From Malacoraja senta (lineage: Eukaryota), in the NCBI GenBank assembly GCA_038087875.1, contig CM075992.1, positions 2,914,001-2,978,000 on the forward strand: 64,000 bases of DNA, in the 5' to 3' direction. Positions 1 through 63,921 of this stretch are shown here, in pieces. The notes below the pieces were generated by a model, which ran no database searches, was not told the origin of the DNA, and saw only the letters and a list, made by a program, of their open reading frames with translations. The first letter of the stretch is position 1; each line of letters starts with the position of its first letter. A program made the position numbers and the translations under genes.

Positions 1-1216
1 GCTTAGGGTCTCTTCTGCAGATCACCCAATCTGCCTTTAGCTCTCCCAGTGAAGAGGAGACCATTTTGTGAATATTGAATACAGTCTTCACGATTGGAAG
101 AAGTACAAGCGAACCACTGCTTTGGTCTGTGGATGGTGGGATGGGAAGATGCGAAAGGACAGATGTATCTCCTTAATTGTATGGAAAGTTACCATATGAT
201 GGGAAAGTGTTGGTATGGATGGAAGAATCAAGTAGGGAAGTTGTGAAAGGTGTGATCCTGTTGTAATGCTGAAAAGGGAGAATTGTATCTCTTTTTCCTC
301 TACCAAACCACAACACCCTCTATGCAACCCCCCCCCCCCCCCCCAGCCCATAATCTCCTCCCTTAACAAACTTCTGAACAGATAGTCTGTATCGGAGTTC
401 AGTTAAATTCAATTTAGTTTATTGTCACGTGTACCGGGGTACAGTGAAAAGCTATAGGTACAGTGAAAAGGATACTGCTGTTGGACATGTAAATAACATG
501 GTCTGGCTATTGTTGCTGAATGAGTGTGACAAGGGCTAGAGATACTGGCCTGGGAGAGGATGATAACATTGATTCACATGTCCTTCCACTTAACCCGAAG
601 GACGCAGGCGCTTAATGTTTTTTACCAGAGCCTTGAGATGCCTTCCTTAGTTCTCCTTCGTATACAGGCAGGCAAGGATCACTATTACCGTATAAATAAT
701 TCGTTTTGTTAGAGGTCTGAGGACAATCAACCAAAGGCTGCACAATGAAGGAAGTGGTGAATTTCACCGCCAACTCTGCCTTCACTGAGATGGCTCCCAA
801 TAGATGAGAAATGATCCATATTTTTGAGGATCTCACTGTGAATCCTAATTGCCAGAGGGCAAGCCCAAAGCAGATGGTAGAGGACTTTGGTCTGGAGGAT
901 GTTGACAGCAAGGCCTAATCTCTCATATGCTTATGCAGCAGAGCTGAGAATGTCTTGAAGCAGTGGCTGCCAAGGTCCTAAACTCTGAAATTATCTACCC
1001 TGTCTCCTCCACCTCTCCTCTAATAATCTCCTTAAAATCTACCTTATGACCAAGCGTCCTTCCTGACATTAGCAAGTACCACCATCCTCAACTTTGTAGA
1101 ATAGGCTTTCCACGTCACACAAAGTTCAAGTCATGAAGTGCTCCGACATAGCCAATTGGGAAATTGTCTAACAAACCTGGATCTACCACAAAGCAATTCT
1201 TGTGAAAAGCACTTAC

Positions 1217-1306
1217 TTTTGCAATTTTAACAAAGTGGCTGAGAACGTCAACTCTTTTTTTAAGCATCTGTTTGGTGAGAATTTCTCTGACCACCCAGAA
1301 ACTAAC
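1217..1306 (-). CDS. RALGPS-like coding exon 5
   Basis: 90 nt, [30 protein letters not shown], gcag/gtaagt. Confidence 0.92.
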
Positions 1307-4300
1307 CTGCAAAGAGAGAATCACCAGTTTATGCTCATCCTTCATTCTTTTATCTCATTCCAAGTGCTTTGCAGAGCAATTTTTTTACAAATGTATAAAG
1401 CTGACTACTTTAGCCAAGACCTTACAAATATTTAATATTGCTGGTGAATTTCTTCTAATGCAACAGCCAAAATTCTTAACCGAATAGAACGACTTCAAAG
1501 ATTAGGCTTTCTTCCACTAATTAAACAGATTTCACTTTTTTATTGAGAACAAACAAAAACAAGATGTACATTTGTCAGTTTTCAGTACATGAAAGTATCA
1601 TGGTAAGAAGCAAAGGCTCAAGCTGAGGGCATGTATTTCTCCTAACAAGGGTTTAGAGACAACATTGGCGAAGTGAACAGAGGGTTAAAATGACTTGTCA
1701 CGGCCTCAGCTATCCAGGTCAGTTTCTAACCCCCTATAGTGTCTGCGTGTAGCTCCTACATTTTCCGTCACCATGTGGGCTTCCCAGGTGCTCAGTTTTC
1801 TCCCACAACATGAAGATGGGCTGGTAGGTACATTAACTTGCCATTCTAAATTACCCTTAGTGGAGGTGGCTGGTGGAAAAATCAGTGAAGTGTTTATGGG
1901 CACAAGAGAGAACAGATTACAAAATTGATGGGATTGCTCCAGAAGCCACCATAGATGAAAATATTTTGGTCAAGTTTATGTTGAACTTCGGCGTTGCGAC
2001 CTGACTTCGGAGCCTCGGAGGCTCGGCCGCGGGCCAGTGGACGACATCATCGTCGGGAGCTCGCAGGTCACAGGTTGGTGACCTGTTTTTCCGGAGCTCC
2101 CGCAACAACAGCTTTGTCCGCTGGACTGGAGGGCGGCAGCTTCGACCGCCCTGGGCCGCGGAGTTTGAACTGGCCCGTTCGCGGAGCTCGGATTCAGCCG
2201 CGGGACTTGCTTACCATCACCCAGCGGGGTCACAACATCGGAGGCCTGGATCGCCTCAGCGCAGAGGGAGAGCAAGGAGGGAAGAGACAAGGACATTGGG
2301 ACTTTTGCCTTCCATCACAGTGAGGAGATGCCTGGTGGACTCACTGTGGTGGATGTTAAATCTGTGATCATTGTGTGTTTTGTTATTTATTCTATGTTAT
2401 GACTGCAGGCTAAACCATTTCGTTGTACTGAAAAGTGCAATGACAATAAAATTGAATCTGAATCTGAAATGAATGTGAATAAACATTTCAATTATGCACT
2501 GGATGAATAAACCAATTTGATCCACATATTGTAGCCTACCTTTTGCGATCATGACCTTGTATATTACTTGACCCTACCTGGTTAAATCTCCGGGTAAAAG
2601 CTACTACATTAGGAGCCAACGCATGCTTCCCCCTCTTGTTCCATGCACAACCAGACAGTTCCTGTTGGAGGGGAAAAAAAAGATTTAAATCCAATACAAG
2701 TAGAAGATTAATTCTGAAAGGAGTCCAGATTTAAATGGTTTATTTACAAAATATTATTTTGCATTCCTGGCAAAAAGGCCTTTTACTTAATACAACAATT
2801 CCTATCCCCATATGCAAGCCACATGTGGAATAGTGCGCGCAAAATGAATTACCTCTTTATCAACACACATTATCCAGATTTGGCTGTTCCTTCTTTATCA
2901 TTGGTCAAAGTGAGGAAGCCCTCAACCCAGCAGAACTATGGAAGTACCATGATGTAGACCATATCAAAGTGCTGGGGCACTACCACCATCCCAAGAACAA
3001 CTCGCATGGCAGAACATTTGTTTTTTGTAAAAGACAATTAAAAATCTGCCTGGAATTTACACCAGACAAACTGCCATTTGCACAACTCAAGCATCATAAG
3101 GCTGGGCGGCTAATAGTCAAGAAGAAATATAACACCAGCAAGTATGGATGGAATTTCCCCTTTACCCCACTCCGTCCAGAAACTAGACACCATATTCAAC
3201 ATGTTACAGGTAGACTTGCATCTCTATATTGCTTTCCTAAACTCAGGTTATGCCAAAGCACTCTATAGCTAGTGAAGTGCTATAGAAGTGCAGTCAATAT
3301 TGTAATACAGCAAATAAATGGAGGCAATGTGTTATTTGTAGTAAAGATAATGAACCAGATAACCTGCTTGTCATGATGTTTATCAGAGAAATGCTAGCCA
3401 GGATACAGAGAAGAACACTCTCTCTTGCTGTTTAAAATAGCAGTACAATTTTATTTTCTGCCTTCAATACCTTTTCTGAAAATCTATCCCTCCAACACTA
3501 CAGCATATCTATCTATATCTAGACTGATAGCTTGAATGTTGTGCTGGAGAGTCAGGAATGGGACTTGACCCATGAGTATAGACTAATAAGTGAGACTGGC
3601 ACCGAAGACCCATGATAATTGTGGAGCAGGATGAAAGATGGAGAGACTGTGAAAGTCTTCATTAAAGAAAAGGTATCTGAATGTAGATCAAGTAGTTCAA
3701 ATGCACATAGAACTGGTCAAAGAATCTGTATAAATCAAAGGAGGTCCACCACCTTTACTACACTCACAACCACCAACCCCTACCATTCTTCCCAAGCCTC
3801 CAAACATCAACCCAGGAAAGGTATTTATTCATCCTTTATGGAGCGAGCATAATCTAGGGATCAAATTTAGTGAATGATTGAGACACTGACCAAGACAAGT
3901 CCACAATCTCGGCAGTAAACTGACTTTTAAAATGTGTTCTGTTTCTCCTCTACTATTGCCCAAGAGATTCCCAAAAACTAAGCATTCTGAGACATATTTT
4001 AAACTAATTTCCAGTTTTTGCTATTCAGCACCAGGATTTCCAGAACAGGATTTAAACATCAACATCTGGATTGGCAGCTGACCATCACTTAACTGTGGTT
4101 CAAGGGCCTAACACTGCTTTATAGGCTGCTATAAAAACAAGATATCAAGTTCAATCTAAAAACATTGCTTATGAATAGAAATGCAGGCGAGATTAAATGG
4201 TGCAGCAGCAGCAAATTTGTAAAGTTAGGTGCTCCGAACTACATCTGCTAAACCCAGCGGAAAGCGAGGACTATTTTACCAGGGCTGTTATCAATTCATT

Positions 4301-13060: not shown

Positions 13061-13662
13061 GTGTATGTGCTTCCTGTGTGCGCCTGCCTGTGTGTGTTTG
13101 TGCATGTGTGTCCCTGTGTGCCACTGTGCATGCCTGTGTGTCTGTCTGTGGATGTTTATGCCTGTGTGTGTGCGTGTCTGTCTGTGTGTTTGTGCATGTG
13201 TCCCTGTGTGCCACTGTGCACGCCTGTGTGTGTCTGTCTTTGTGCATGTGTCCCTGTGTGCCATTGTGCATGCCTGTGTGTGTGTGCTTGCCTGTGTGTG
13301 TGCTTGCCTGTGTGCGCCTGCCTGTGTGTGTTTGTGCATGTGTGTCTGTGTGCCACTGTGCATGCCTGTGTGTGTGCGTGCCTGTGTCTGTGGGTGTTTG
13401 TGCATGTGTATGCCTGTGTGTGTTTGTGCATGTGTCCCTTTGTGCCACTGTGCATGCCTGTGTGCCTGCCTGTGTGTGTGCGTGCCTGTGTGTGTCTGCC
13501 TGTGTGTGTTTGTGCATGTGTGCCACTGTGCGTGCCTGTGTGTGTCTGCCTGTGTGTGTTTGTGCATGTGTGTGCCACTGCATGCCTGTGCGTGTGTGTA
13601 TGCCTGTGTGCCACTGTACATGTATGTGCGTGCTTGTGTGTGTAAGCCAGTGTGTGTGTGCA
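13061..13662. repeat. complex (TG)-rich minisatellite
   Basis: Recurring units such as tgtgtgtttgtgcatgtg / ccactgtgcatgcctgtg. Confidence 0.95.
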
Positions 13663-13929
13663 CAGTTAGACATCATCAACTGCAATTCAGACTGGTGCCT
13701 GCAGCAAATGGAACTGAAACTGGCCTCTTCCCTGTCACATGACACGGGGGAGGTGGGGAAGTGAGCTGTGGGAGGAGGGGGGAGAGAGATAAGATCAGAC
13801 ATGGTTTCACCAGCGAGAACAGTGCTTTGAGTACATAGCTGGCTCTGTGTGTGTTGGCGAGGGCTAGTTTTTATAATCACAAGCGCATCCCCTCTGCTCT
13901 TTGCACAAAGCTCTGTCAGTGGAGTGAGG

Positions 13930-13950
13930 ATGATCTGTCCTCAGAGGAAG
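13930..13950 (+). CDS. ST6GALNAC3-like coding exon 1 (cytoplasmic tail MICPQRK)
   Basis: aggATGa start and AAG/gtaaat donor, phase 0. A short first exon fits the family. Confidence 0.65.
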
Positions 13951-16900
13951 GTAAATGCTTTTTTTTTTCCCTTCTCTCCCTTTTCTATATTCAGCTGGAA
14001 TCAGAGAAAGGGCAACGGGGCAGGCAAGGATGATTTGCATGTATCTCTGTATCTCTGTGCTGCCGTTGCATCCATTACATTTAAAACATGGTGCTATTTC
14101 TCAAGCTGGCGGCATCCTGCCCATCCTTCCAGTTATGCCTGTCAACCCGCTGAAGCCAAGGATGAGGGGAAAAAAACGGTAGCTACTAATAAAGAAAATG
14201 ATTAGTTTATGTGCAATAGCAAACATGCCTTCATACACACCAAGTCCTGATCCCCTTTCACTCCTGACTTGCACTGTATCCTGGTTTTAAAATGTACATC
14301 CTTGTTTCCAAAGCCTTCCATTGTCTTGTTTCTCCCTGCCTCTGTAACCTCCTGCAGCTCCGTAACCCACTGCCTTCCCTTTGCTGGTGCGTTTGTGGCC
14401 TCTTGCTCGTCCCTGAATTCATTTGATCCACCACTGGTGGCAGTACTATTATTTATCACGTCCGGCAGCTCACAAAATTTACCCCCTCAACCTTTCTCTC
14501 CCCCCCTTTCTCTCCCCCCCCCCTTTCTCTCCCCCCTCTTTCTCTCCCCCCCCTTTCTCTCCCCCCCCCCTTTCTCTCCCCCCCCCTTTCTCTCCCCCCC
14601 CTTTCTCTCCCCCCCCCCTTTCTCTCCCCCCCTTTCTCTCCCCCCCCTTTCTCTCCCCCCCCCCCTTTCTCCCCCCCCCCTTTCTCTCCCCCCCCCTTTC
14701 TCTCCCCCCCCTTTCTCTCCCCCCCCCTTTCTCTCCCCCCCCTTTCTCTCCCCCCCCTTTCTCTCCCCCCCCCTTTCTCTCCCCCCCCCTTTCTCTCCCC
14801 CCCCCTTTCTCTCCCCCCCCTTTCTCTCCCCCCCCCTTTCTCTCCCCCCCCCTTTCTCTCCCCCCCCCTTTCTCCCCCCCCCCTTTCTCCCCCCCCCCTT
14901 TCTCTCCCCCCCTTTCTCTCCCCCCCCTTTCTCTCCCCCCCCTTTCTCTCCCCCCCCCCTTTCTCTCCCCCCCCTTTCTCTCCCCCCCCTTTCTCTCCCC
15001 CCCCTTTCTCTCCCCCCCTTCTCTCCCCCCCTTCTCTCCCCCCCTTCTCTCCCCCCCTTCTCTCCCCCCCCTTTCTCTCCCCCCCCTTTCTCTCCCCCCC
15101 TTTCTCTCCCCCCCTTTCTCTCCCCCCCTTTCTCTCCCCCCCCTTTCTCTCCCCCCCCTTTCTCTCCCCCCCCTTTCTCTCCCCCCCTTTCTCTCCCCCC
15201 CTTTCTCTCCCCCCCCTTTCTCTCCCCCCCCTTCTCTGCCCCCCTTTCTCTCCCCCCCTTTCTCTCCCTCTCCTCCCCCCCCTCTCCTCCCCCCCCTCCC
15301 TCTCTCCCTCTCTCCCTAATTCTCTCTTAAAATCTTCTCGCCGATCTTTGCGTCAAAATCTGTTTAATAGTGTTCCTGCTATCAGGAGTTCCTGACTATG
15401 AGTGATGAGCTTTGTTGCTGCATGAAATCAAAAGCTCTCGCTGTTATCAGTGCGTTTATATCACAAAGCCAGGCGAAAATGAAGGATCTCGACCCGAAAT
15501 GTCACCCATTCCTTTTCTCCAGAGATTCTGTCTGACCCGCCGAGTTACTTCAGATTTTTTGTGTCGATCTTTGATTTAAACCTGCATCTGCAGTTCCTTC
15601 AGCAACGGTTCAGGAGGTCTTCGACTGGTCTTCTACATATTTTCAGAAATGTTCTTGTATCTGTAAAGCTACGCCTTTTAATCGGTCATCACCCTTATTC
15701 ACTATCGTACGGTACAGAGCAAGGCCATAGGACAAGAACAGGCCACTCAGCCCCATATATTTGTGCTATCATTCAATTCAATGATGATGATTCAACAATA
15801 CTTTTCTGCCATTGGTACTTAGGTATAGTGAAATTCTTTGTTTTGTATACAATGCACAAAGTGCACAAAAGAGTTGCCAAGTTTCTGGTGCCGACAAAGT
15901 TACAAAAGTACTCGAGTTACAAGAGTCACATTAGTCCCTCCTCGTTCTTGGCGACACCCTTTCTTCCGCTTCCCTCCCCCCCCCCACACACCGACAAGGT
16001 CCCTCTTAGATCTCCACGGTCCCCACCCCACCAGGTCCCTCTAAGTTCTCCCGCGGCACGGCCCCTTCTAGACCCGACGGACTGCACAGCCATGTGTCGT
16101 CACCAACAGTCACGTCCCTCCAGAAATGCCCCCCTACAGGGTAACACTCCCTCGGCACTGTCCTCTGACAGGAATAGCAATCCCTTGACAGTGCAGCCCT
16201 TACCAGGACCACTCCCCTGGTGATAGCATACCTCAGTACTGCCCCTCTGACAGTGCGGCACTCCCTCAGTACTCCTGCTTTCTGTGCTATCTTCTTGAGT
16301 TACTCCAGCATTTTGTGTCTATCTTCGGTTTAAAGCAGCATCTGCAGTTCCTTCATGCACATCAAATTAATTTTGTTTCTCCCAGCGGAATGTTCTCCTG
16401 GCCATGGGTGTGATCGGAGGTGTGTCCTTCCTTGTTGCTGTGGTCCACTACATCCACCAGTCTCCCTATCCCGTTATGCTCTCGCAGCTGGCTGGCAGAC
16501 CGGCCATTGACGGCCTGAGCCATTTCTTCGGTGCTTTTGGTCAGAACGGCAAGTTGCTGCGAGGCTACGTCAGCCTCCCGGAACAGCAGGTGAGTCCGTG
16601 AATCACCTTGGACAGGCGCGTGGCTTCGAATGATATGGGCCAAACACAGGCAGATGGGACATCTTGGTCGGCAGAGTTGAGTTGGGCCGAAGAGCTTGTT
16701 TCCGTGCTGTCCACACTATGAACACACTGTCCACACTGCTGCTGATACCTCGCCGAGCAGGTCTGAAGAAGGGTCTCGACCCGAAACATCACCCATTTCT
16801 TCTCTCCAAAGATCCTGTCTGTCCCGCTGAGTTACACTAGCTCAGGAGTTCCCAACCTTTTTCGTCCCGTTTACCCCAGGCAACTTTAATAGCACATAAC

Positions 16901-19247
16901 AATGTTATTTCACTTATTTATGAACAACTAATGATGAACAGATACCGATATACCAGAACCAAACACAGTCAGTCAATGAGAAAAAAATATGTACAAATCC
17001 ACAGTCAACAAATTAGCCCCCCTGGGAAGGCAAAATTGCCCCCTGGGATCGTATCCCATCCGTTTAAGGTGACGGGGAAAAGATTTCATAAGAATCCAAG
17101 GGGTGACTTTTTCACACAAAGGATGGTGGGTGTATGGAACAAGCTGCTGGAGGAGGTAGTTGAAGCAGGGACTATCCCAACATTTAAGAAACAGTTAGAC
17201 AGGTACATGGGGTAGTGTAGGAAACTGCAGATGCTGGTTTAAATTGAAGAAAATGCTGGAGTAACTCAGCGGACAGGCAGCATCTCTGGAGAGAGGGAAT
17301 GGGTGACGTTTCGGATGGAGACTTCAGATAGGTACATGGATAGGACAGGTTTGGAGGGTTATGGACCAAACGTGGGTAGGTGGGACTAGAGTAGATGGAA
17401 CATGTCGGGAGACTGTATCACTCTACGACTCTATGTTCTCTCCCTGTCTCCAGCCTCTGGACCTCGCCTGTCAACAGTGCAGCATCATCTCCAGTTCTGG
17501 GCAGATGTTGGGCATGAAGCTGGGAGCTGAGATCGACCAGTCGGAATGTGTGTGGAGGATGAACAACGCTCCAACGGAGGGGTTTGAGTCTGACGTGGGC
17601 AGCAAGACCACGGTGCGAGTGGTGTCCCACACCAGCACCCCGCTGCTGCTCCGCCAAAGAGCTTTCCTCTCCGGTCTCAACAGCTCCTTCCACGTCTTCT
17701 GGGGCCCGCAGCGCAACATGCGGCGCGACGGCAAGGGGATCATCTACAACATGCTCCGCACCGTCCACAGTCACTTCCCCGCCGCCAAGATCTACACCCT
17801 GACAGAGGAACAGATGAGGCTCTGCGATATCGCCTTCAAGAGAGAGACAGGGAAAGACAGGTAGGGAGAGCAAGACTCCACAGTTCCCTGCAACTGACGG
17901 TAAAACAGAACCGTATCACCGCACTGACAGAGGAGACACTAACTCCTAGAACAGGGGTGGGGAACCTTTCCATGTTGGAATGCTGCATTGTTAGCTGTAA
18001 TCTAATAAGGCCGCATCCAAGAAACTTCAATTAGATATACTTCAAAATGTACATTATTTTGTAAAAATCTAACTACTATGTACTAACTTCAAGAAAATGA
18101 AAAAAAAAATGGTTAATTTTAAAGTTAACTAACCTTTTAATGACTTTGTTGTGACTGCTTTCTCGAGTCTCGGGTTACATTAGAACTAAATCATGAGCAA
18201 ACAGGTGTTAAAATAGCCCTCATGACTTACTAATAAGATGAGGCTGAGTTTCTCCAGCATTTTTGTGTACCTTTGATTTTCCAGCATCTGCAGTTCCTTC
18301 TTTAACACTCATGACTTACTAATGTTTTAATTGTGGCCGTCAGTCGGGGAGGATTATTTCGTTGAATCTTCTTTTACTCTTTGGTATTTTAAATACGTTC
18401 ATTATAAGATTAAAATAAAAATAATAAAAGACGAACAAAAACATCTTAATAAAATAGAAATAAAAGGATTTGTTCTACAAAACTTGGATTCATTCAAAAG
18501 GCCGCACTTAATGGCCTAGAAGGCCGCAGGTTCCCCACCCCTGTCCTAGAACGTAGACACACAATGCTGGAGTAACGTCAACCATTCCTCCTCTCCAGAG
18601 ATGCTGTCTGTCCCGCTGAGTTACTCCAGCATTTTGTGTCTACCTTCTATCCATGTTCATTGGCTTCCATCTTCCAGTCCCGCCTCAAGACCCATCTCTT
18701 CACCTCTGCATACCCTTAGTCCCCATGTTCCCCTCCCCTTTGCATCTCTGTCTTATTGTTTATTCTTGACTCTCAATGTAAAGCGACTTTGAGTCCTGAA
18801 AAGCGCTATATAAATAAAATGTATTATTATTAGTATTATTGGCTATATTTAAGAGGGAGTTAGATGCCCTTCTGGCTAAAGGGATCAGGGGGTATGGAGA
18901 GAAAGCAGGTACAGGATACTGAGTTGGATGATCAGCCATGATCATATTGAATGGCGATGCAGGCTCGAAGGGCCGAATGGCCTACTCCACCTATTTTCTA
19001 TGTTTCTATCTACCCGTCTAACTGTTTCTTAAACGTTGCGATTGTCTCTGCCTCAACTACCTCCTCTGGCAGCAAGGTGTTGTCTGTCAGAGTTCCCCTG
19101 ACTTGCTCCCCAATGTTAACCTTGTTCTCTGTGTTGCAGGGTGTTGTCTGGCTCGTATCTCAGCACTGGCTGGTTCACTTTCATCCTGGCGATGGAGGCT
19201 TGCAGCAACATTCACGTCTACGGAATGATCAACGACACTTACTGCAG
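13930..19247 (+). CDS. alpha-N-acetylgalactosaminide alpha-2,6-sialyltransferase, ST6GALNAC3-like (GT29); 4 coding exons, last exon not in the assembled sequence
   Basis: Exons 13930-13950 (MICPQRK), 16386-16589 (TM anchor and stem), 17454-17860 (sialylmotif L: CSIISSSGQM...RMNNAPT...DVG...RVVSHTS), 19140-19247 (sialylmotif S: SGSYLSTGWFTFILAMEACSNIHVYGMINDTYC). Frame is continuous across AG/GT junctions. Confidence 0.93.
14490..15320. repeat. polypyrimidine minisatellite (C6-10 TTTCTCT)n
   Basis: ~830 bp almost pure C/T, 13-17 nt units. Confidence 0.97.
16386..16589 (+). CDS. ST6GALNAC3-like coding exon 2 (type II TM anchor, stem)
   Basis: RNVLLAMGVIGGVSFLVAVVHYIH...LRGYVSLPEQQ, cccag/gtgagt. 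Confidence 0.85.
17060..17435 (+). mobile_element. CR1-type 3' fragment with nested Penelope-derived cassette
   Basis: FFTQRMVGVWNKLLEEVVEAG. Insert ~17215-17325 is flanked by a duplicated aga(c/t)aggtacatgg. Confidence 0.75.
17454..17860 (+). CDS. ST6GALNAC3-like coding exon 3 (sialylmotif L)
   Basis: 407 nt, PLDLACQQC...FKRETGKDR. Confidence 0.95.
17952..18543. mobile_element. non-autonomous hAT (Charlie-like) DNA transposon / MITE
   Basis: 16-bp TIRs CAGGGGTGGGGAACCT / AGGTTCCCCACCCCTG. 8-bp TSD tcctagaa at 17944-17951 and 18544-18551. Contains a nested Penelope-derived insert with 16-bp TSD (18219-18234, 18308-18323). Confidence 0.9.
18838..19010 (+). mobile_element. CR1-type 3' end
   Basis: Near-identical to 56258-56430. 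Confidence 0.85.
19140..19247 (+). CDS. ST6GALNAC3-like coding exon 4 (sialylmotif S)
   Basis: 108 nt, VLSGSYLSTGWFTF...NDTYCR. Confidence 0.95.
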
Positions 19248-19359
19248 GTACCACAGAGGACAACCATTACCTCCCATGAATCACACCGCCCATCACTCCC
19301 TCCCTCAGCCCCACCACCTCTCCCAAGTGCGTCCCATTCACCCACCACCCTCTTTTTGT

Positions 19360-19620
19360 TTTGATTTAGGGAAAGGCCTTTCGGCCCGCCGACCAGCGAT
19401 CCCCGCACACTAGCACTATCCCACACACATACTAGGGACAATTTACATTTACCCCAAGCCAATTAGCCTACAAACCTGTGCGTCTTTGGAGTGTGGGAGG
19501 AAACCAGAGATCCTGGAGAAAACCCACGCAGGTCATGGGGAGAACGTACAGACAGCACCCGTAGTTAGGATCGAACACGGGTCCCTGGCGCTGTAAGGCA
19601 GCAACTCTACCGCTGCGGCC
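19360..19620 (-). mobile_element. tRNA-derived SINE (HE1/V-SINE type)
   Basis: Head gcagcggtagagttgctgccttacagcgcc...gttcgatcc (A/B box-like), central ggttttctcc...ttcctcccacactccaaagac, CR1-like tail. Confidence 0.8.
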
Positions 19621-19787
19621 CTTTGTTTAAAAATATACATTTAAAACTTGGCCGTGCACATTTCATTTAAAGTTTGTCCCTTTCACCTTCAAGCTATCCC
19701 CTCCAGAATCTGACATGCCCACCTTGGGATAAAGTTTCTGACGAAATGTGTGGGAAGGAACTGCAGATGCTGGTGTTCTAGGTCTCC

Positions 19788-20190
19788 CCCATTGTCAGAG
19801 TGAGGCTAAACGCAAATTGGAGGAACAGCATCTCATATTTCGCTTGGGCAGCTTACATCCCAGTGGTATTAATATTGATTTCTCTAACTTCAGGTAGCCC
19901 CGGCATTCCCTCTCTCTCTCTCTCTCTCTCTCTATCCCTCCCCCACCCAAGTCGCACCAGCTTCTCATTTTCAGCTTACAAACGGCTAACAGTGGGCCTG
20001 TTTCCTTTATCATCTTGCAAAAGATATTTGCATATCTTTTATTCATTGTTCTTTATCTCTCCACATAGTCTATATCTCTCGTTTCCTTACCCTAACCAGT
20101 CTGAAGAAGGGTCTCGATCCAAAACGTCACCCATTCCTTCTCTCCAGAGACGCTGCCTGTCCCGCTGAGTTACTCCAACCTTTTGTGCCT
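19788..20190 (+). mobile_element. Penelope-like element 3' end
   Basis: CQSEAKRKLEEQHLIFRLGSLHPSGINIDF, followed by ctgaagaagggtctcgatccaaaacgtc terminal repeat. Confidence 0.85.
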
Positions 20191-20813
20191 ATAAAGGTTG
20201 TGACTGTCTACCCTATCTGTGCCTCTTATTTTACATTATTTTATTAGGGGTCTCAACCCTGGTCTTTCCAAGAAAATAACCCAAGTTTGGCTGGTCCACA
20301 TATGTTTAGTAACATTATTGCAGGATATATACTGTAACTGGCACTCTGTATCTCCCTTGCGGTGCTGGCTCGAAGGGCTAAATGGCCTACTCCTGCACCT
20401 ATTGTCTATTGCCCTGTGCATTGAAGTGGTGCCATAGGATCTTGTAGGGTGGGAGAGGGGTAGGTATGATTGCAGAGAACAGCATGTGTGGCCCAGAAAT
20501 ACCAAACGTTTCCTTCGCTCCATAGATGCTGCTGCACCCGCTGAATTTCTCCAGCACTTTTGTCTACCTTATAAAATCTATTATTATTATTATTACCTTA
20601 TACCAAACGTTATCCTATTAGCTTGGGTTATGAATGAATGAATTAATAAGTTTACTGGCCAAGTATGTACACATACAAGGAATTTTCCTTGGTGCTCCGC
20701 TCGCAAGTAACAACACGACACACAGTAAACCATTAAGAATAAAACATTAAACCATTAAAATTAAAACATAGTTTAAACATGTGAATGAAATAAAATACCA
20801 GAGCAAAAGGAGG

Positions 20814-21013
20814 NNNNNNNNNNNNNNNNNNNNNNNNNNNNNNNNNNNNNNNNNNNNNNNNNNNNNNNNNNNNNNNNNNNNNNNNNNNNNNNNNNNNNNN
20901 NNNNNNNNNNNNNNNNNNNNNNNNNNNNNNNNNNNNNNNNNNNNNNNNNNNNNNNNNNNNNNNNNNNNNNNNNNNNNNNNNNNNNNNNNNNNNNNNNNNN
21001 NNNNNNNNNNNNN
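20814..21013. other. assembly gap (200 N)
   Basis: Exactly 200 Ns followed by a poly-G run. The round number suggests a placeholder scaffold gap of unknown true size. Confidence 0.99.
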
Positions 21014-21024
21014 GGGGGGGGGGG

Positions 21025-21168
21025 GGGAACCGAAGATTTCGGAGAAAAACCCATGTGGTCATGGGGAGAAGGTACAAACTCTGTACAGACAGCACCCGTA
21101 GTCGGGATGGAACCCGGGTCTCTGGCGCTGTAAGGCAGCAACTCTACCACTGCACCACCATGCCGCCC
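21025..21168 (-). mobile_element. HE1/V-SINE 5' part, truncated at the gap
   Basis: Same head as 19360-19620. Confidence 0.8.
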
Positions 21169-21198
21169 ATGATACTATGTGGTACTTACACAGTTCTA

Positions 21199-63921
<42,723 letters not shown>

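What the first reader, a model, noticed from the sequence alone, without database searches (positions are those of the whole stretch)
13930..19247. Compact ST6GALNAC3/4-type sialyltransferase in the DNMT1 paralogon: possible ohnologue absent from mammals
Seen: intact sialylmotifs L and S closest to ST6GALNAC3 (SGSYLSTGWFTF.LAM.AC..IHVYGMINDTYC), with some ST6GALNAC4-like residues (SSSGQMLG..LGAEID), and four exons in 5.3 kb. Established: human ST6GALNAC3/5 lie on 1p31 (ST6GALNAC3 is a very large gene) and ST6GALNAC4/6 on 9q34, with none beside DNMT1 on 19p13. Inference: an additional subfamily member that could add a distinct O-glycan/ganglioside sialylation activity in elasmobranchs.
Basis: partly seen in the sequence, partly recalled or inferred. 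Interest (0 to 1): 0.7.

Follow-up and report, generated by a model that had tools for sequence, protein, structure and literature searches.

The report
Seventh ST6GalNAc sialyltransferase in skates
This skate carries a real, selectively conserved sialic-acid-adding enzyme gene that is an ancient sister of ST6GALNAC3, found so far only in sharks and rays, although its last exon falls in an assembly gap here.

Summary
Four canonical exons on the + strand (13930-13950, 16386-16589, 17454-17860, 19140-19247) encode 246 residues of a type II GT29 sialyltransferase with intact sialylmotifs L and S.

The fifth exon (motifs III and VS) is not in the window. Collinearity with three other skates runs to 20806, and their exon 5 starts about 460 bp further on, inside the N gap at 20814-21013.

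Orthologues of 300-335 aa are auto-annotated "ST6GALNAC3-like" in at least 15 sharks and rays. They are spliced and transcribed in a related skate. dN/dS is 0.12-0.16.

A true ST6GALNAC3 exists on another chromosome in the same species, including the skates Rhinoraja and Amblyraja.

In a mixture-model ML tree the clade (100/99) is sister to all jawed-vertebrate ST6GALNAC3. AU tests reject an elasmobranch-only duplication (p=0.013) and ST6GALNAC4 orthology (p=0.0045).

No bony-vertebrate member appeared in the searches. Conserved neighbours are a RALGPS-type RasGEF gene upstream and an AK5-like gene downstream, mirroring human 9q33-34 and 1p31. A WGD ohnologue is therefore likely but not proven.

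DNMT1 is adjacent only across the gap. The "ST6GALNAC4-like" residues are ancestral, not ST6GALNAC4-specific.

No paper found names this subfamily. It is a new member of a known kind, of moderate interest.

The parts
13791..13929 (+). 5'UTR part of exon 1
   Evidence: The related-skate transcript L001 (nt 33-190) aligns to 13791-13950 at 96.9% identity.
13930..13950 (+). Exon 1 coding part (7 aa, basic cytoplasmic tail)
   Evidence: An ATG is followed by an AAG|gtaaat donor. The peptide is identical to the Rhinoraja orthologue's N-terminus.
16386..16589 (+). Exon 2: signal-anchor helix and stem region (68 aa)
   Evidence: Borders are a cccag| acceptor and a CAG|gtgagt donor. tblastn gives 91% identity to P0001. 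A 19-residue hydrophobic segment follows the basic tail. The AF2 model of the orthologue has a helix at residues 5-32.
17454..17860 (+). Exon 3: start of the catalytic domain, with sialylmotif L at 17469-17630
   Evidence: Pfam PF00777 hits at E 5e-19. Identity to skate orthologues is 97%. Invariant Cys81, Cys84 and Cys107 are present.
19140..19247 (+). Exon 4: sialylmotif S at 19147-19227; the exon ends in phase 2
   Evidence: Pfam PF00777 hits at E 2e-5. Borders are a ttgcag| acceptor and a CAG|gtacca donor. Invariant Cys232 is present.
19248..20813 (+). 5' part of intron 4
   Evidence: The stretch is collinear with Rhinoraja, Amblyraja and Leucoraja intron 4 up to 20806. It holds no exon 5.
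20814..21013 (.). 200-N gap where exon 5 (motifs III and VS, stop codon, 3'UTR) is expected
   Evidence: In three skates exon 5 starts about 450-470 bp beyond the point that aligns to 20806. Nothing matching the relatives' exon 5 or 3'UTR occurs anywhere in the window. The letters were not looked up.
14491..15268 (.). 15-nt tandem repeat (about 52 copies) inside intron 1
   Evidence: Tandem Repeats Finder score 1210. It is the source of the long proline-rich pseudo-ORFs.
1118..2730 (-). Upstream neighbour: RasGEF-domain exons of a RALGPS-type gene
   Evidence: Pfam RasGEF hits at E 1e-6 (1118-1354) and weakly at 2539-2730. A RasGEF+PH gene lies upstream on the - strand in Rhinoraja, Amblyraja and Leucoraja, and a RasGEF gene likewise in Heterodontus.
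21199..44167 (-). Downstream neighbour across the gap: DNMT1, whose 3'-most assembled exon is 21199-21396
   Evidence: Pfam hits are DNA_methylase (21199-21396 and 28995-29348), BAH (34109-34429) and DNMT1-RFD (43940-44167). Its own last exon is also missing.

Best explanation
The locus is a functional gene for a seventh vertebrate ST6GalNAc-type sialyltransferase, auto-annotated 'ST6GALNAC3-like' and here called 3L. It arose by duplication of the ST6GALNAC3 lineage before cartilaginous and bony vertebrates split, most likely in a whole-genome duplication. Among the taxa sampled it has been kept only in sharks and rays. It is a compact five-exon gene lying between a RALGPS-type RasGEF gene and an AK5-like adenylate kinase gene. 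In this assembly the contig breaks about 0.46 kb before exon 5, so only four exons are visible and DNMT1 appears as the neighbour. The following is inferred from family membership and was not assayed. The product is a type II Golgi membrane protein. It uses CMP-Neu5Ac and the motif-VS histidine (His281 in the orthologues) to add sialic acid in alpha2,6 linkage to the GalNAc of Neu5Ac-alpha2,3-Gal-beta1,3-GalNAc. The acceptor would be on O-glycans and/or GM1b-type gangliosides, as for ST6GalNAc III and IV.
For: Gene model and motifs. Transcription in a relative: spliced transcripts from three sequencing runs of a close relative match the four exons. Constraint: dN/dS is 0.14-0.16 against that transcript and 0.12 against Rhinoraja. 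Completeness in relatives: full orthologues of 300-335 aa carry motifs III and VS in at least 15 elasmobranch species. Fold: the AF2 model of the Amblyraja orthologue has pLDDT 84, and all top Foldseek hits are GT29 sialyltransferases. Coexistence: a true ST6GALNAC3 lies on another chromosome in Rhinoraja, Amblyraja, Mobula, Narcine and Heptranchias (also present in Pristiophorus, contig not on record). Phylogeny: in the ML tree (LG+C20+F+G4) 3L scores 100/99, is sister to gnathostome ST6GALNAC3 (100/98) with the union at 95/90, and lamprey sits outside that. AU tests reject 3L+elasmobranch-ST6GALNAC3 (p=0.013) and 3L+ST6GALNAC4 (p=0.0045). Taxon range: none of 108 other top hits falls in the 3L clade. 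Synteny: the order RasGEF(-) | 3L(+) | AK5-like(+) is conserved in three skates and Heterodontus; in Cetorhinus only 3L(+) | AK5-like(+) was seen. RasGEF and DNMT1 are both in the window.
Against: Exon 5 is not in the window, so intactness in this genome is unproven. DNMT1 adjacency depends on a scaffold join. Ohnology rests on three linked gene families recalled from human maps, not on a genome-wide paralogon analysis. The AK5-like gene was not shown to be distinct from AK5. Absence from bony vertebrates and from chimaeras rests on top-120 hit lists of annotated proteins, not on genome searches. The AU p of 0.013 is significant but not overwhelming. No enzymatic data exist.
Confidence: 0.72

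Rival explanations
1. 3L is an ancient but small-scale (segmental or tandem-then-translocated) duplicate of ST6GALNAC3, not a whole-genome-duplication ohnologue.
For: The tree fixes only the timing, before the chondrichthyan-osteichthyan split and after the lamprey sequence. No ST6GALNAC5/6-type partner lies next to 3L in the window or in L004, unlike the 3-5 and 4-6 pairs. The paralogon assignment was not computed.
Against: 3L sits on a different chromosome from ST6GALNAC3. It is flanked by members of two other families (RALGPS-type and AK1/AK5-type) that are also linked to ST6GALNAC genes on human 9q33-34 and 1p31 (human positions from established maps). That pattern points to a block duplication.
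Confidence: 0.15
2. 3L is the elasmobranch orthologue of ST6GALNAC4, slow-evolving in sharks and fast-evolving in bony vertebrates.
For: No elasmobranch ST6GALNAC4-type protein appeared in any of three top-120 lists. With a batoid query the best ST6GALNAC4-type hits were sturgeon and teleost. Bony ST6GALNAC4 has longer branches.
Against: The AU test rejects 3L+ST6GALNAC4 (p=0.0045, delta lnL 27.5) under a site-heterogeneous model. 3L groups with ST6GALNAC3 at 95/90. The locus carries DNMT1 and a RALGPS-type gene rather than 9q34 markers.
Confidence: 0.06
3. 3L is an elasmobranch-specific duplicate of ST6GALNAC3 that then evolved fast.
For: It is seen only in elasmobranchs. It has a long stem branch of 0.43.
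Against: The AU test rejects 3L+elasmobranch ST6GALNAC3 (p=0.013). Elasmobranch and bony ST6GALNAC3 form a 100/98 clade that excludes 3L. Callorhinchus ST6GALNAC3 groups with elasmobranch ST6GALNAC3, not with 3L.
Confidence: 0.04
4. In this particular species the gene is a truncated pseudogene that has lost its last exon.
For: Exon 5 and the 3'UTR are absent from all 64 kb. The sequence after the gap is DNMT1, not the AK5-like gene seen in relatives.
Against: The break is an N run, and collinearity with relatives continues to within 8 bp of it. All four exons are open with intact splice sites and dN/dS of 0.12-0.16. DNMT1, an essential gene, also lacks its last exon here, which points to missing assembly rather than deletion.
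Confidence: 0.05

Closest known systems
ST6GalNAc III (ST6GALNAC3)
   Same: It is the nearest relative, at 55-60% identity over the full length. It shares the five-coding-exon layout (phases not compared), a short type II stem, all four sialylmotifs in orthologues, and a sister position in the tree. The same acceptor trisaccharide is expected.
   Different: 3L forms a separate clade that predates the shark/bony-vertebrate split. It coexists with true ST6GALNAC3 on another chromosome. The gene is compact, at 5-24 kb, whereas ST6GALNAC3 is a very large gene in mammals. Six residues are fixed in 3L and differ from those fixed in ST6GALNAC3: T137, S153, F183, F225, E265 and N303.
ST6GalNAc IV (ST6GALNAC4)
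   Same: It belongs to the same ST6GalNAc III-VI group, has a similar length and is 45-56% identical. It is possibly a functional analogue if elasmobranchs lack ST6GALNAC4.
   Different: Monophyly with 3L is rejected.
Lineage-restricted GT29 subfamilies lost in mammals (ST3Gal VII-IX, ST8Sia VII-IX)
   Same: The evolutionary pattern is the same: extra WGD-era paralogues kept in some vertebrate lineages and lost in others (review PMC10225777).
   Different: Those subfamilies belong to the ST3GAL and ST8SIA families. The review counts only six ST6GALNAC subfamilies and says the ST6GALNAC history had not been reconstructed.

Membership tests
GT29 sialyltransferases (Pfam PF00777) | Significant match to the Glyco_transf_29 profile | tested here: met
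   Exon 3 scores E 5e-19, exon 4 E 2e-5 and the full orthologue P0263 E 2e-31.
GT29 sialyltransferases | Sialylmotifs L and S with their conserved cysteines | tested here: met
   Both motifs are intact in window exons 3 and 4. Cys81, Cys84, Cys107 and Cys232 are invariant across 39 family members.
GT29 sialyltransferases | Sialylmotifs III and VS with the catalytic histidine | tested here: inconclusive
   They are not in the window because exon 5 falls in the N gap. They are present and conserved in all full-length orthologues, including three skates.
GT29 sialyltransferases | GT-A variant 2 fold of the solved sialyltransferases | tested here: met
   The AF2 model of the Amblyraja orthologue has pLDDT 84. 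Foldseek probability is 1.0 to ST8Sia III, ST6Gal I, ST6GalNAc II and ST3Gal I. This was tested on the orthologue, not on the truncated window product.
ST6GalNAc III-VI group | Falls inside the vertebrate 3/4/5/6 clade relative to invertebrate deuterostome sequences | tested here: met
   The tree uses hemichordate, amphioxus and sea-urchin outgroups.
ST6GALNAC3 orthology group | Nested within the gnathostome ST6GALNAC3 clade and the only such gene in the genome | tested here: not met
   3L is sister to the clade, not inside it. A true ST6GALNAC3 is present in related skates on another chromosome. The AU test gives p=0.013.
ST6GALNAC4 orthology group | Monophyly with bony-vertebrate ST6GALNAC4 | tested here: not met
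   The AU test gives p=0.0045.
WGD ohnologue | Duplication dated to the vertebrate or gnathostome stem | tested here: met
   The split lies after the lamprey sequence and before the chondrichthyan-osteichthyan divergence.
WGD ohnologue | Location in a paralogous block shared with the sister genes | tested here: inconclusive
   RALGPS-type and AK5-like neighbours are conserved in four relatives, and the AK5-like one in a fifth. DNMT1 is in the window. The parallel with human 9q33-34 and 1p31 comes from memory of human maps, and no paralogon analysis was run.
Type II Golgi glycosyltransferase topology | Short basic N-terminal tail followed by a single hydrophobic anchor | tested here: met
   The tail of exon 1 is followed by a 19-residue hydrophobic stretch in exon 2. 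The model has a helix at residues 5-32.

The most novel reading that the evidence does not exclude
3L and ST6GALNAC4 are reciprocally retained paralogues. Elasmobranchs lost ST6GALNAC4 and kept 3L, while bony vertebrates did the opposite. On this reading 3L is the disialyl-T O-glycan enzyme of sharks and rays. The RALGPS-like/3L/AK5-like block would then be a surviving piece of the 19p13-type paralogon that was dismantled in bony vertebrates.
Probability: 0.2. Interest if true: 0.55.

Novelty: new member of a known kind. Interest (0 to 1): 0.45.

Why it matters
The ST6GALNAC family is the one sialyltransferase family whose vertebrate history was still described as unreconstructed in 2023, with six subfamilies counted (PMC10225777). 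A seventh, pre-gnathostome-crown subfamily kept in sharks and rays would complete the parallel with the extra ST3Gal and ST8Sia subfamilies. It would add a marker gene to the 1p31/9q34/19p13 paralogon. It would also offer a compact, easily cloned enzyme for asking how acceptor preference (ganglioside versus O-glycan) diverged after duplication. This is a sound but incremental result. The protein is already in databases under a generic '-like' name.

Tried and rejected
- Exon 5 in the window: tblastn, motif regexes and transcript blastn over all 64 kb found nothing.
- DNMT1's last exon: a search for it also found nothing.
- Representative search at 50% clustering: it could not separate 3L from ST6GALNAC3.
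- Elasmobranch ST6GALNAC4: none appeared in the top-120 lists, and the candidates P0500-P0502 proved to be teleost. This is inconclusive, not evidence of absence.
- Skate ST6GALNAC3 among unnamed Logan hits: all were bony vertebrates. It was found later by a batoid query.
- A second GT29 gene beside 3L: only one weak hit turned up, at L004 25016-25177, E 0.003.
- DNA of the large shark assemblies: it was not retrievable. One isoform was not on record.
- Literature: searches for st6galnac7/VII and for ST6GalNAc together with cartilaginous fish found nothing relevant.
- Walking from the AK5-like gene to DNMT1 in relatives was not possible with the look-up rules.

Full report
**What is in the window**

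On the + strand four open segments join through canonical splice sites. They are 13930-13950, 16386-16589, 17454-17860 and 19140-19247.

The joined reading frame gives 246 residues plus two bases. Its parts are:
- a basic seven-residue tail;
- a 19-residue hydrophobic anchor and a stem (exon 2);
- sialylmotif L (17469-17630, exon 3);
- sialylmotif S (19147-19227, exon 4).

Pfam Glyco_transf_29 hits exons 3 and 4 on their own. A 1.67-kb spliced contig from sequencing runs of a closely related skate (L001-L003) is 95-98% identical at the nucleotide level. It aligns to exactly these four exons and extends exon 1 upstream to 13791.

**The missing last exon**

Orthologues are 309 aa, and their residues 247-309 carry motifs III and VS. 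Nothing like that exon or its 3'UTR occurs anywhere in the 64 kb.

The window has one N run, at 20814-21013. Intron 4 of the window is collinear with the loci of Rhinoraja (L004), Amblyraja (L005) and Leucoraja (L006) up to 20806. In all three, exon 5 begins 450-470 bp beyond that point.

The assembly therefore breaks just before the exon. I did not look up the hidden letters.

On the far side of the gap lies DNMT1 on the - strand. It shows DNA_methylase, BAH and DNMT1-RFD hits from 21.2 to 44.2 kb. DNMT1's own last exon is also missing.

In Heterodontus, Cetorhinus, Rhinoraja, Amblyraja and Leucoraja the gene that follows 3L, 4-10 kb downstream on the same strand, is a two-ADK-domain AK5-like kinase. 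The gap therefore hides more than 200 bases, and "beside DNMT1" is a scaffold-level statement. That 200 N is a scaffolder's placeholder is my inference.

**Is it a live gene?**

- All splice sites are intact.
- dN/dS is 0.14-0.16 against the related-skate transcript and 0.12 against Rhinoraja.
- Full-length orthologues are annotated in Leucoraja, Amblyraja, Rhinoraja, Mobula (two species), Narcine, Pristiophorus, Heterodontus, Heptranchias, Cetorhinus, Stegostoma, Chiloscyllium, Mustelus and Scyliorhinus. There is also a fragment in Rhincodon.
- An AlphaFold2 model of the Amblyraja orthologue is confident (pLDDT 84). Its best structural matches are all GT29 sialyltransferases.
- No solved structure exists for the III-VI group.

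**What it is related to**

The same species also carry a true ST6GALNAC3 on a much larger chromosome. Contig sizes for 3L against ST6GALNAC3 are:
- Rhinoraja: 19.1 against 61.0 Mb;
- Amblyraja: 24.0 against 70.1 Mb;
- Heptranchias: 22.5 against 89.4 Mb;
- Narcine and Mobula likewise.

In Hemitrygon, ST6GALNAC3 and ST6GALNAC5 share one 116-Mb contig.

I built a careful ML tree (LG+C20+F+G4, 58 sequences, invertebrate deuterostome outgroups):
- It recovers 3L at 100/99.
- 3L is sister to a 100/98 clade holding elasmobranch and bony ST6GALNAC3, with the union at 95/90.
- A lamprey sequence is the next branch out (95/92).
- Bony ST6GALNAC4 is separate.

AU tests reject holding 3L with elasmobranch ST6GALNAC3 (p=0.013) and with ST6GALNAC4 (p=0.0045).

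When all top hits of the first search are placed in a tree, none of the 108 non-elasmobranch or ST6GALNAC3 sequences enters the 3L clade. Callorhinchus showed only ST6GALNAC3.

Six positions are fixed in 3L and fixed differently in ST6GALNAC3. It reflects divergence of the human sequence rather than ST6GALNAC4 affinity.

**Ohnologue or not**

The order RasGEF+PH gene (-) | 3L (+) | AK5-like (+) is conserved in three skates, and Heterodontus shows RasGEF (-) | 3L (+) | AK5-like (+). RasGEF exons are in the window at 1118-2730.

I confirmed only the RasGEF/PH nature and the position.

From established human maps, recalled and not computed here:
- RALGPS1/ANGPTL2, AK1, ST6GALNAC6 and ST6GALNAC4 are linked on 9q33-34.
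- ST6GALNAC3, ST6GALNAC5 and AK5 are linked on 1p31.
- ANGPTL6 and DNMT1 lie together on 19p13.2.

Three linked families repeated on three regions, together with the timing in the tree, make a WGD origin the best reading.

**Function**

By homology, the product should be a Golgi type II enzyme. It would transfer Neu5Ac from CMP-Neu5Ac in alpha2,6 linkage to the GalNAc of sialyl-T or GM1b-type acceptors, with the motif-VS histidine as catalytic base (family mechanism as summarised in PMC10225777). Whether it prefers glycolipids, like III, or O-glycans, like IV, is unknown.

No elasmobranch ST6GALNAC4-type protein appeared in three hit lists. That leaves room for a reciprocal-loss scenario, but it is not evidence of absence.

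**Novelty**

The protein is already in public databases under the generic name "ST6GALNAC3-like".

The 2023 family review counts six ST6GALNAC subfamilies and states that the ST6GALNAC history had not been reconstructed. Searches for a seventh subfamily name, or for ST6GalNAc work on cartilaginous fish, found nothing.

I rate it a new member of a known kind. It is of moderate interest to glyco-evolution specialists and ordinary otherwise.

Noticed in passing
window 20814-21013: The single 200-N gap swallows the 3'-terminal exons of two convergent genes, 3L and DNMT1. In five related species an AK5-like gene follows 3L. The join probably hides a whole contig or is a scaffolding shortcut.
   Followed up: partly
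L004 31670-31921; L005 21336-27137; L006 22778-28418: A two-ADK-domain, AK5-like gene of 548-591 aa lies 4-10 kb downstream of 3L in three skates and two sharks. It may be a third AK1/AK5-type paralogue kept with 3L. It was not shown to be distinct from AK5.
   Followed up: partly
hit lists: No elasmobranch ST6GALNAC4-type protein turned up, even with a batoid query. The best ST6GALNAC4-type hits were sturgeon and teleost. ST6GALNAC4 may have been lost in sharks and rays; this is untested.
   Followed up: partly
P0317, P0158 (Acipenser): Sturgeon proteins named 'ST6GALNAC3-like' or 'hypothetical' fall in the ST6GALNAC4 clade. This looks like a database misnaming.
   Followed up: yes
window 13061-13632: A complex TG-rich tandem array (units of 16-92 nt) lies about 160 bp upstream of the mapped 5' end of exon 1. 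It produces long Cys/Val pseudo-ORFs on both strands.
   Followed up: no
window 51521-52462 (-): A 314-aa open frame inside a DNMT1 intron looks like a fragment of a transposable-element protein.
   Followed up: no
window about 19470-19640, 21020-21175, 27440-27620 and others: A SINE-like element is repeated on both strands and also in the Rhinoraja locus. Its translations share the 'LPYSARDPGSI..TTGAVC' string.
   Followed up: no
L004 25016-25177 (-): A weak tblastn hit (E 0.003, 36%) to ST6GALNAC5 residues 135-193 lies downstream of 3L in Rhinoraja. It is either chance or a relic of a lost 5/6-type partner.
   Followed up: no
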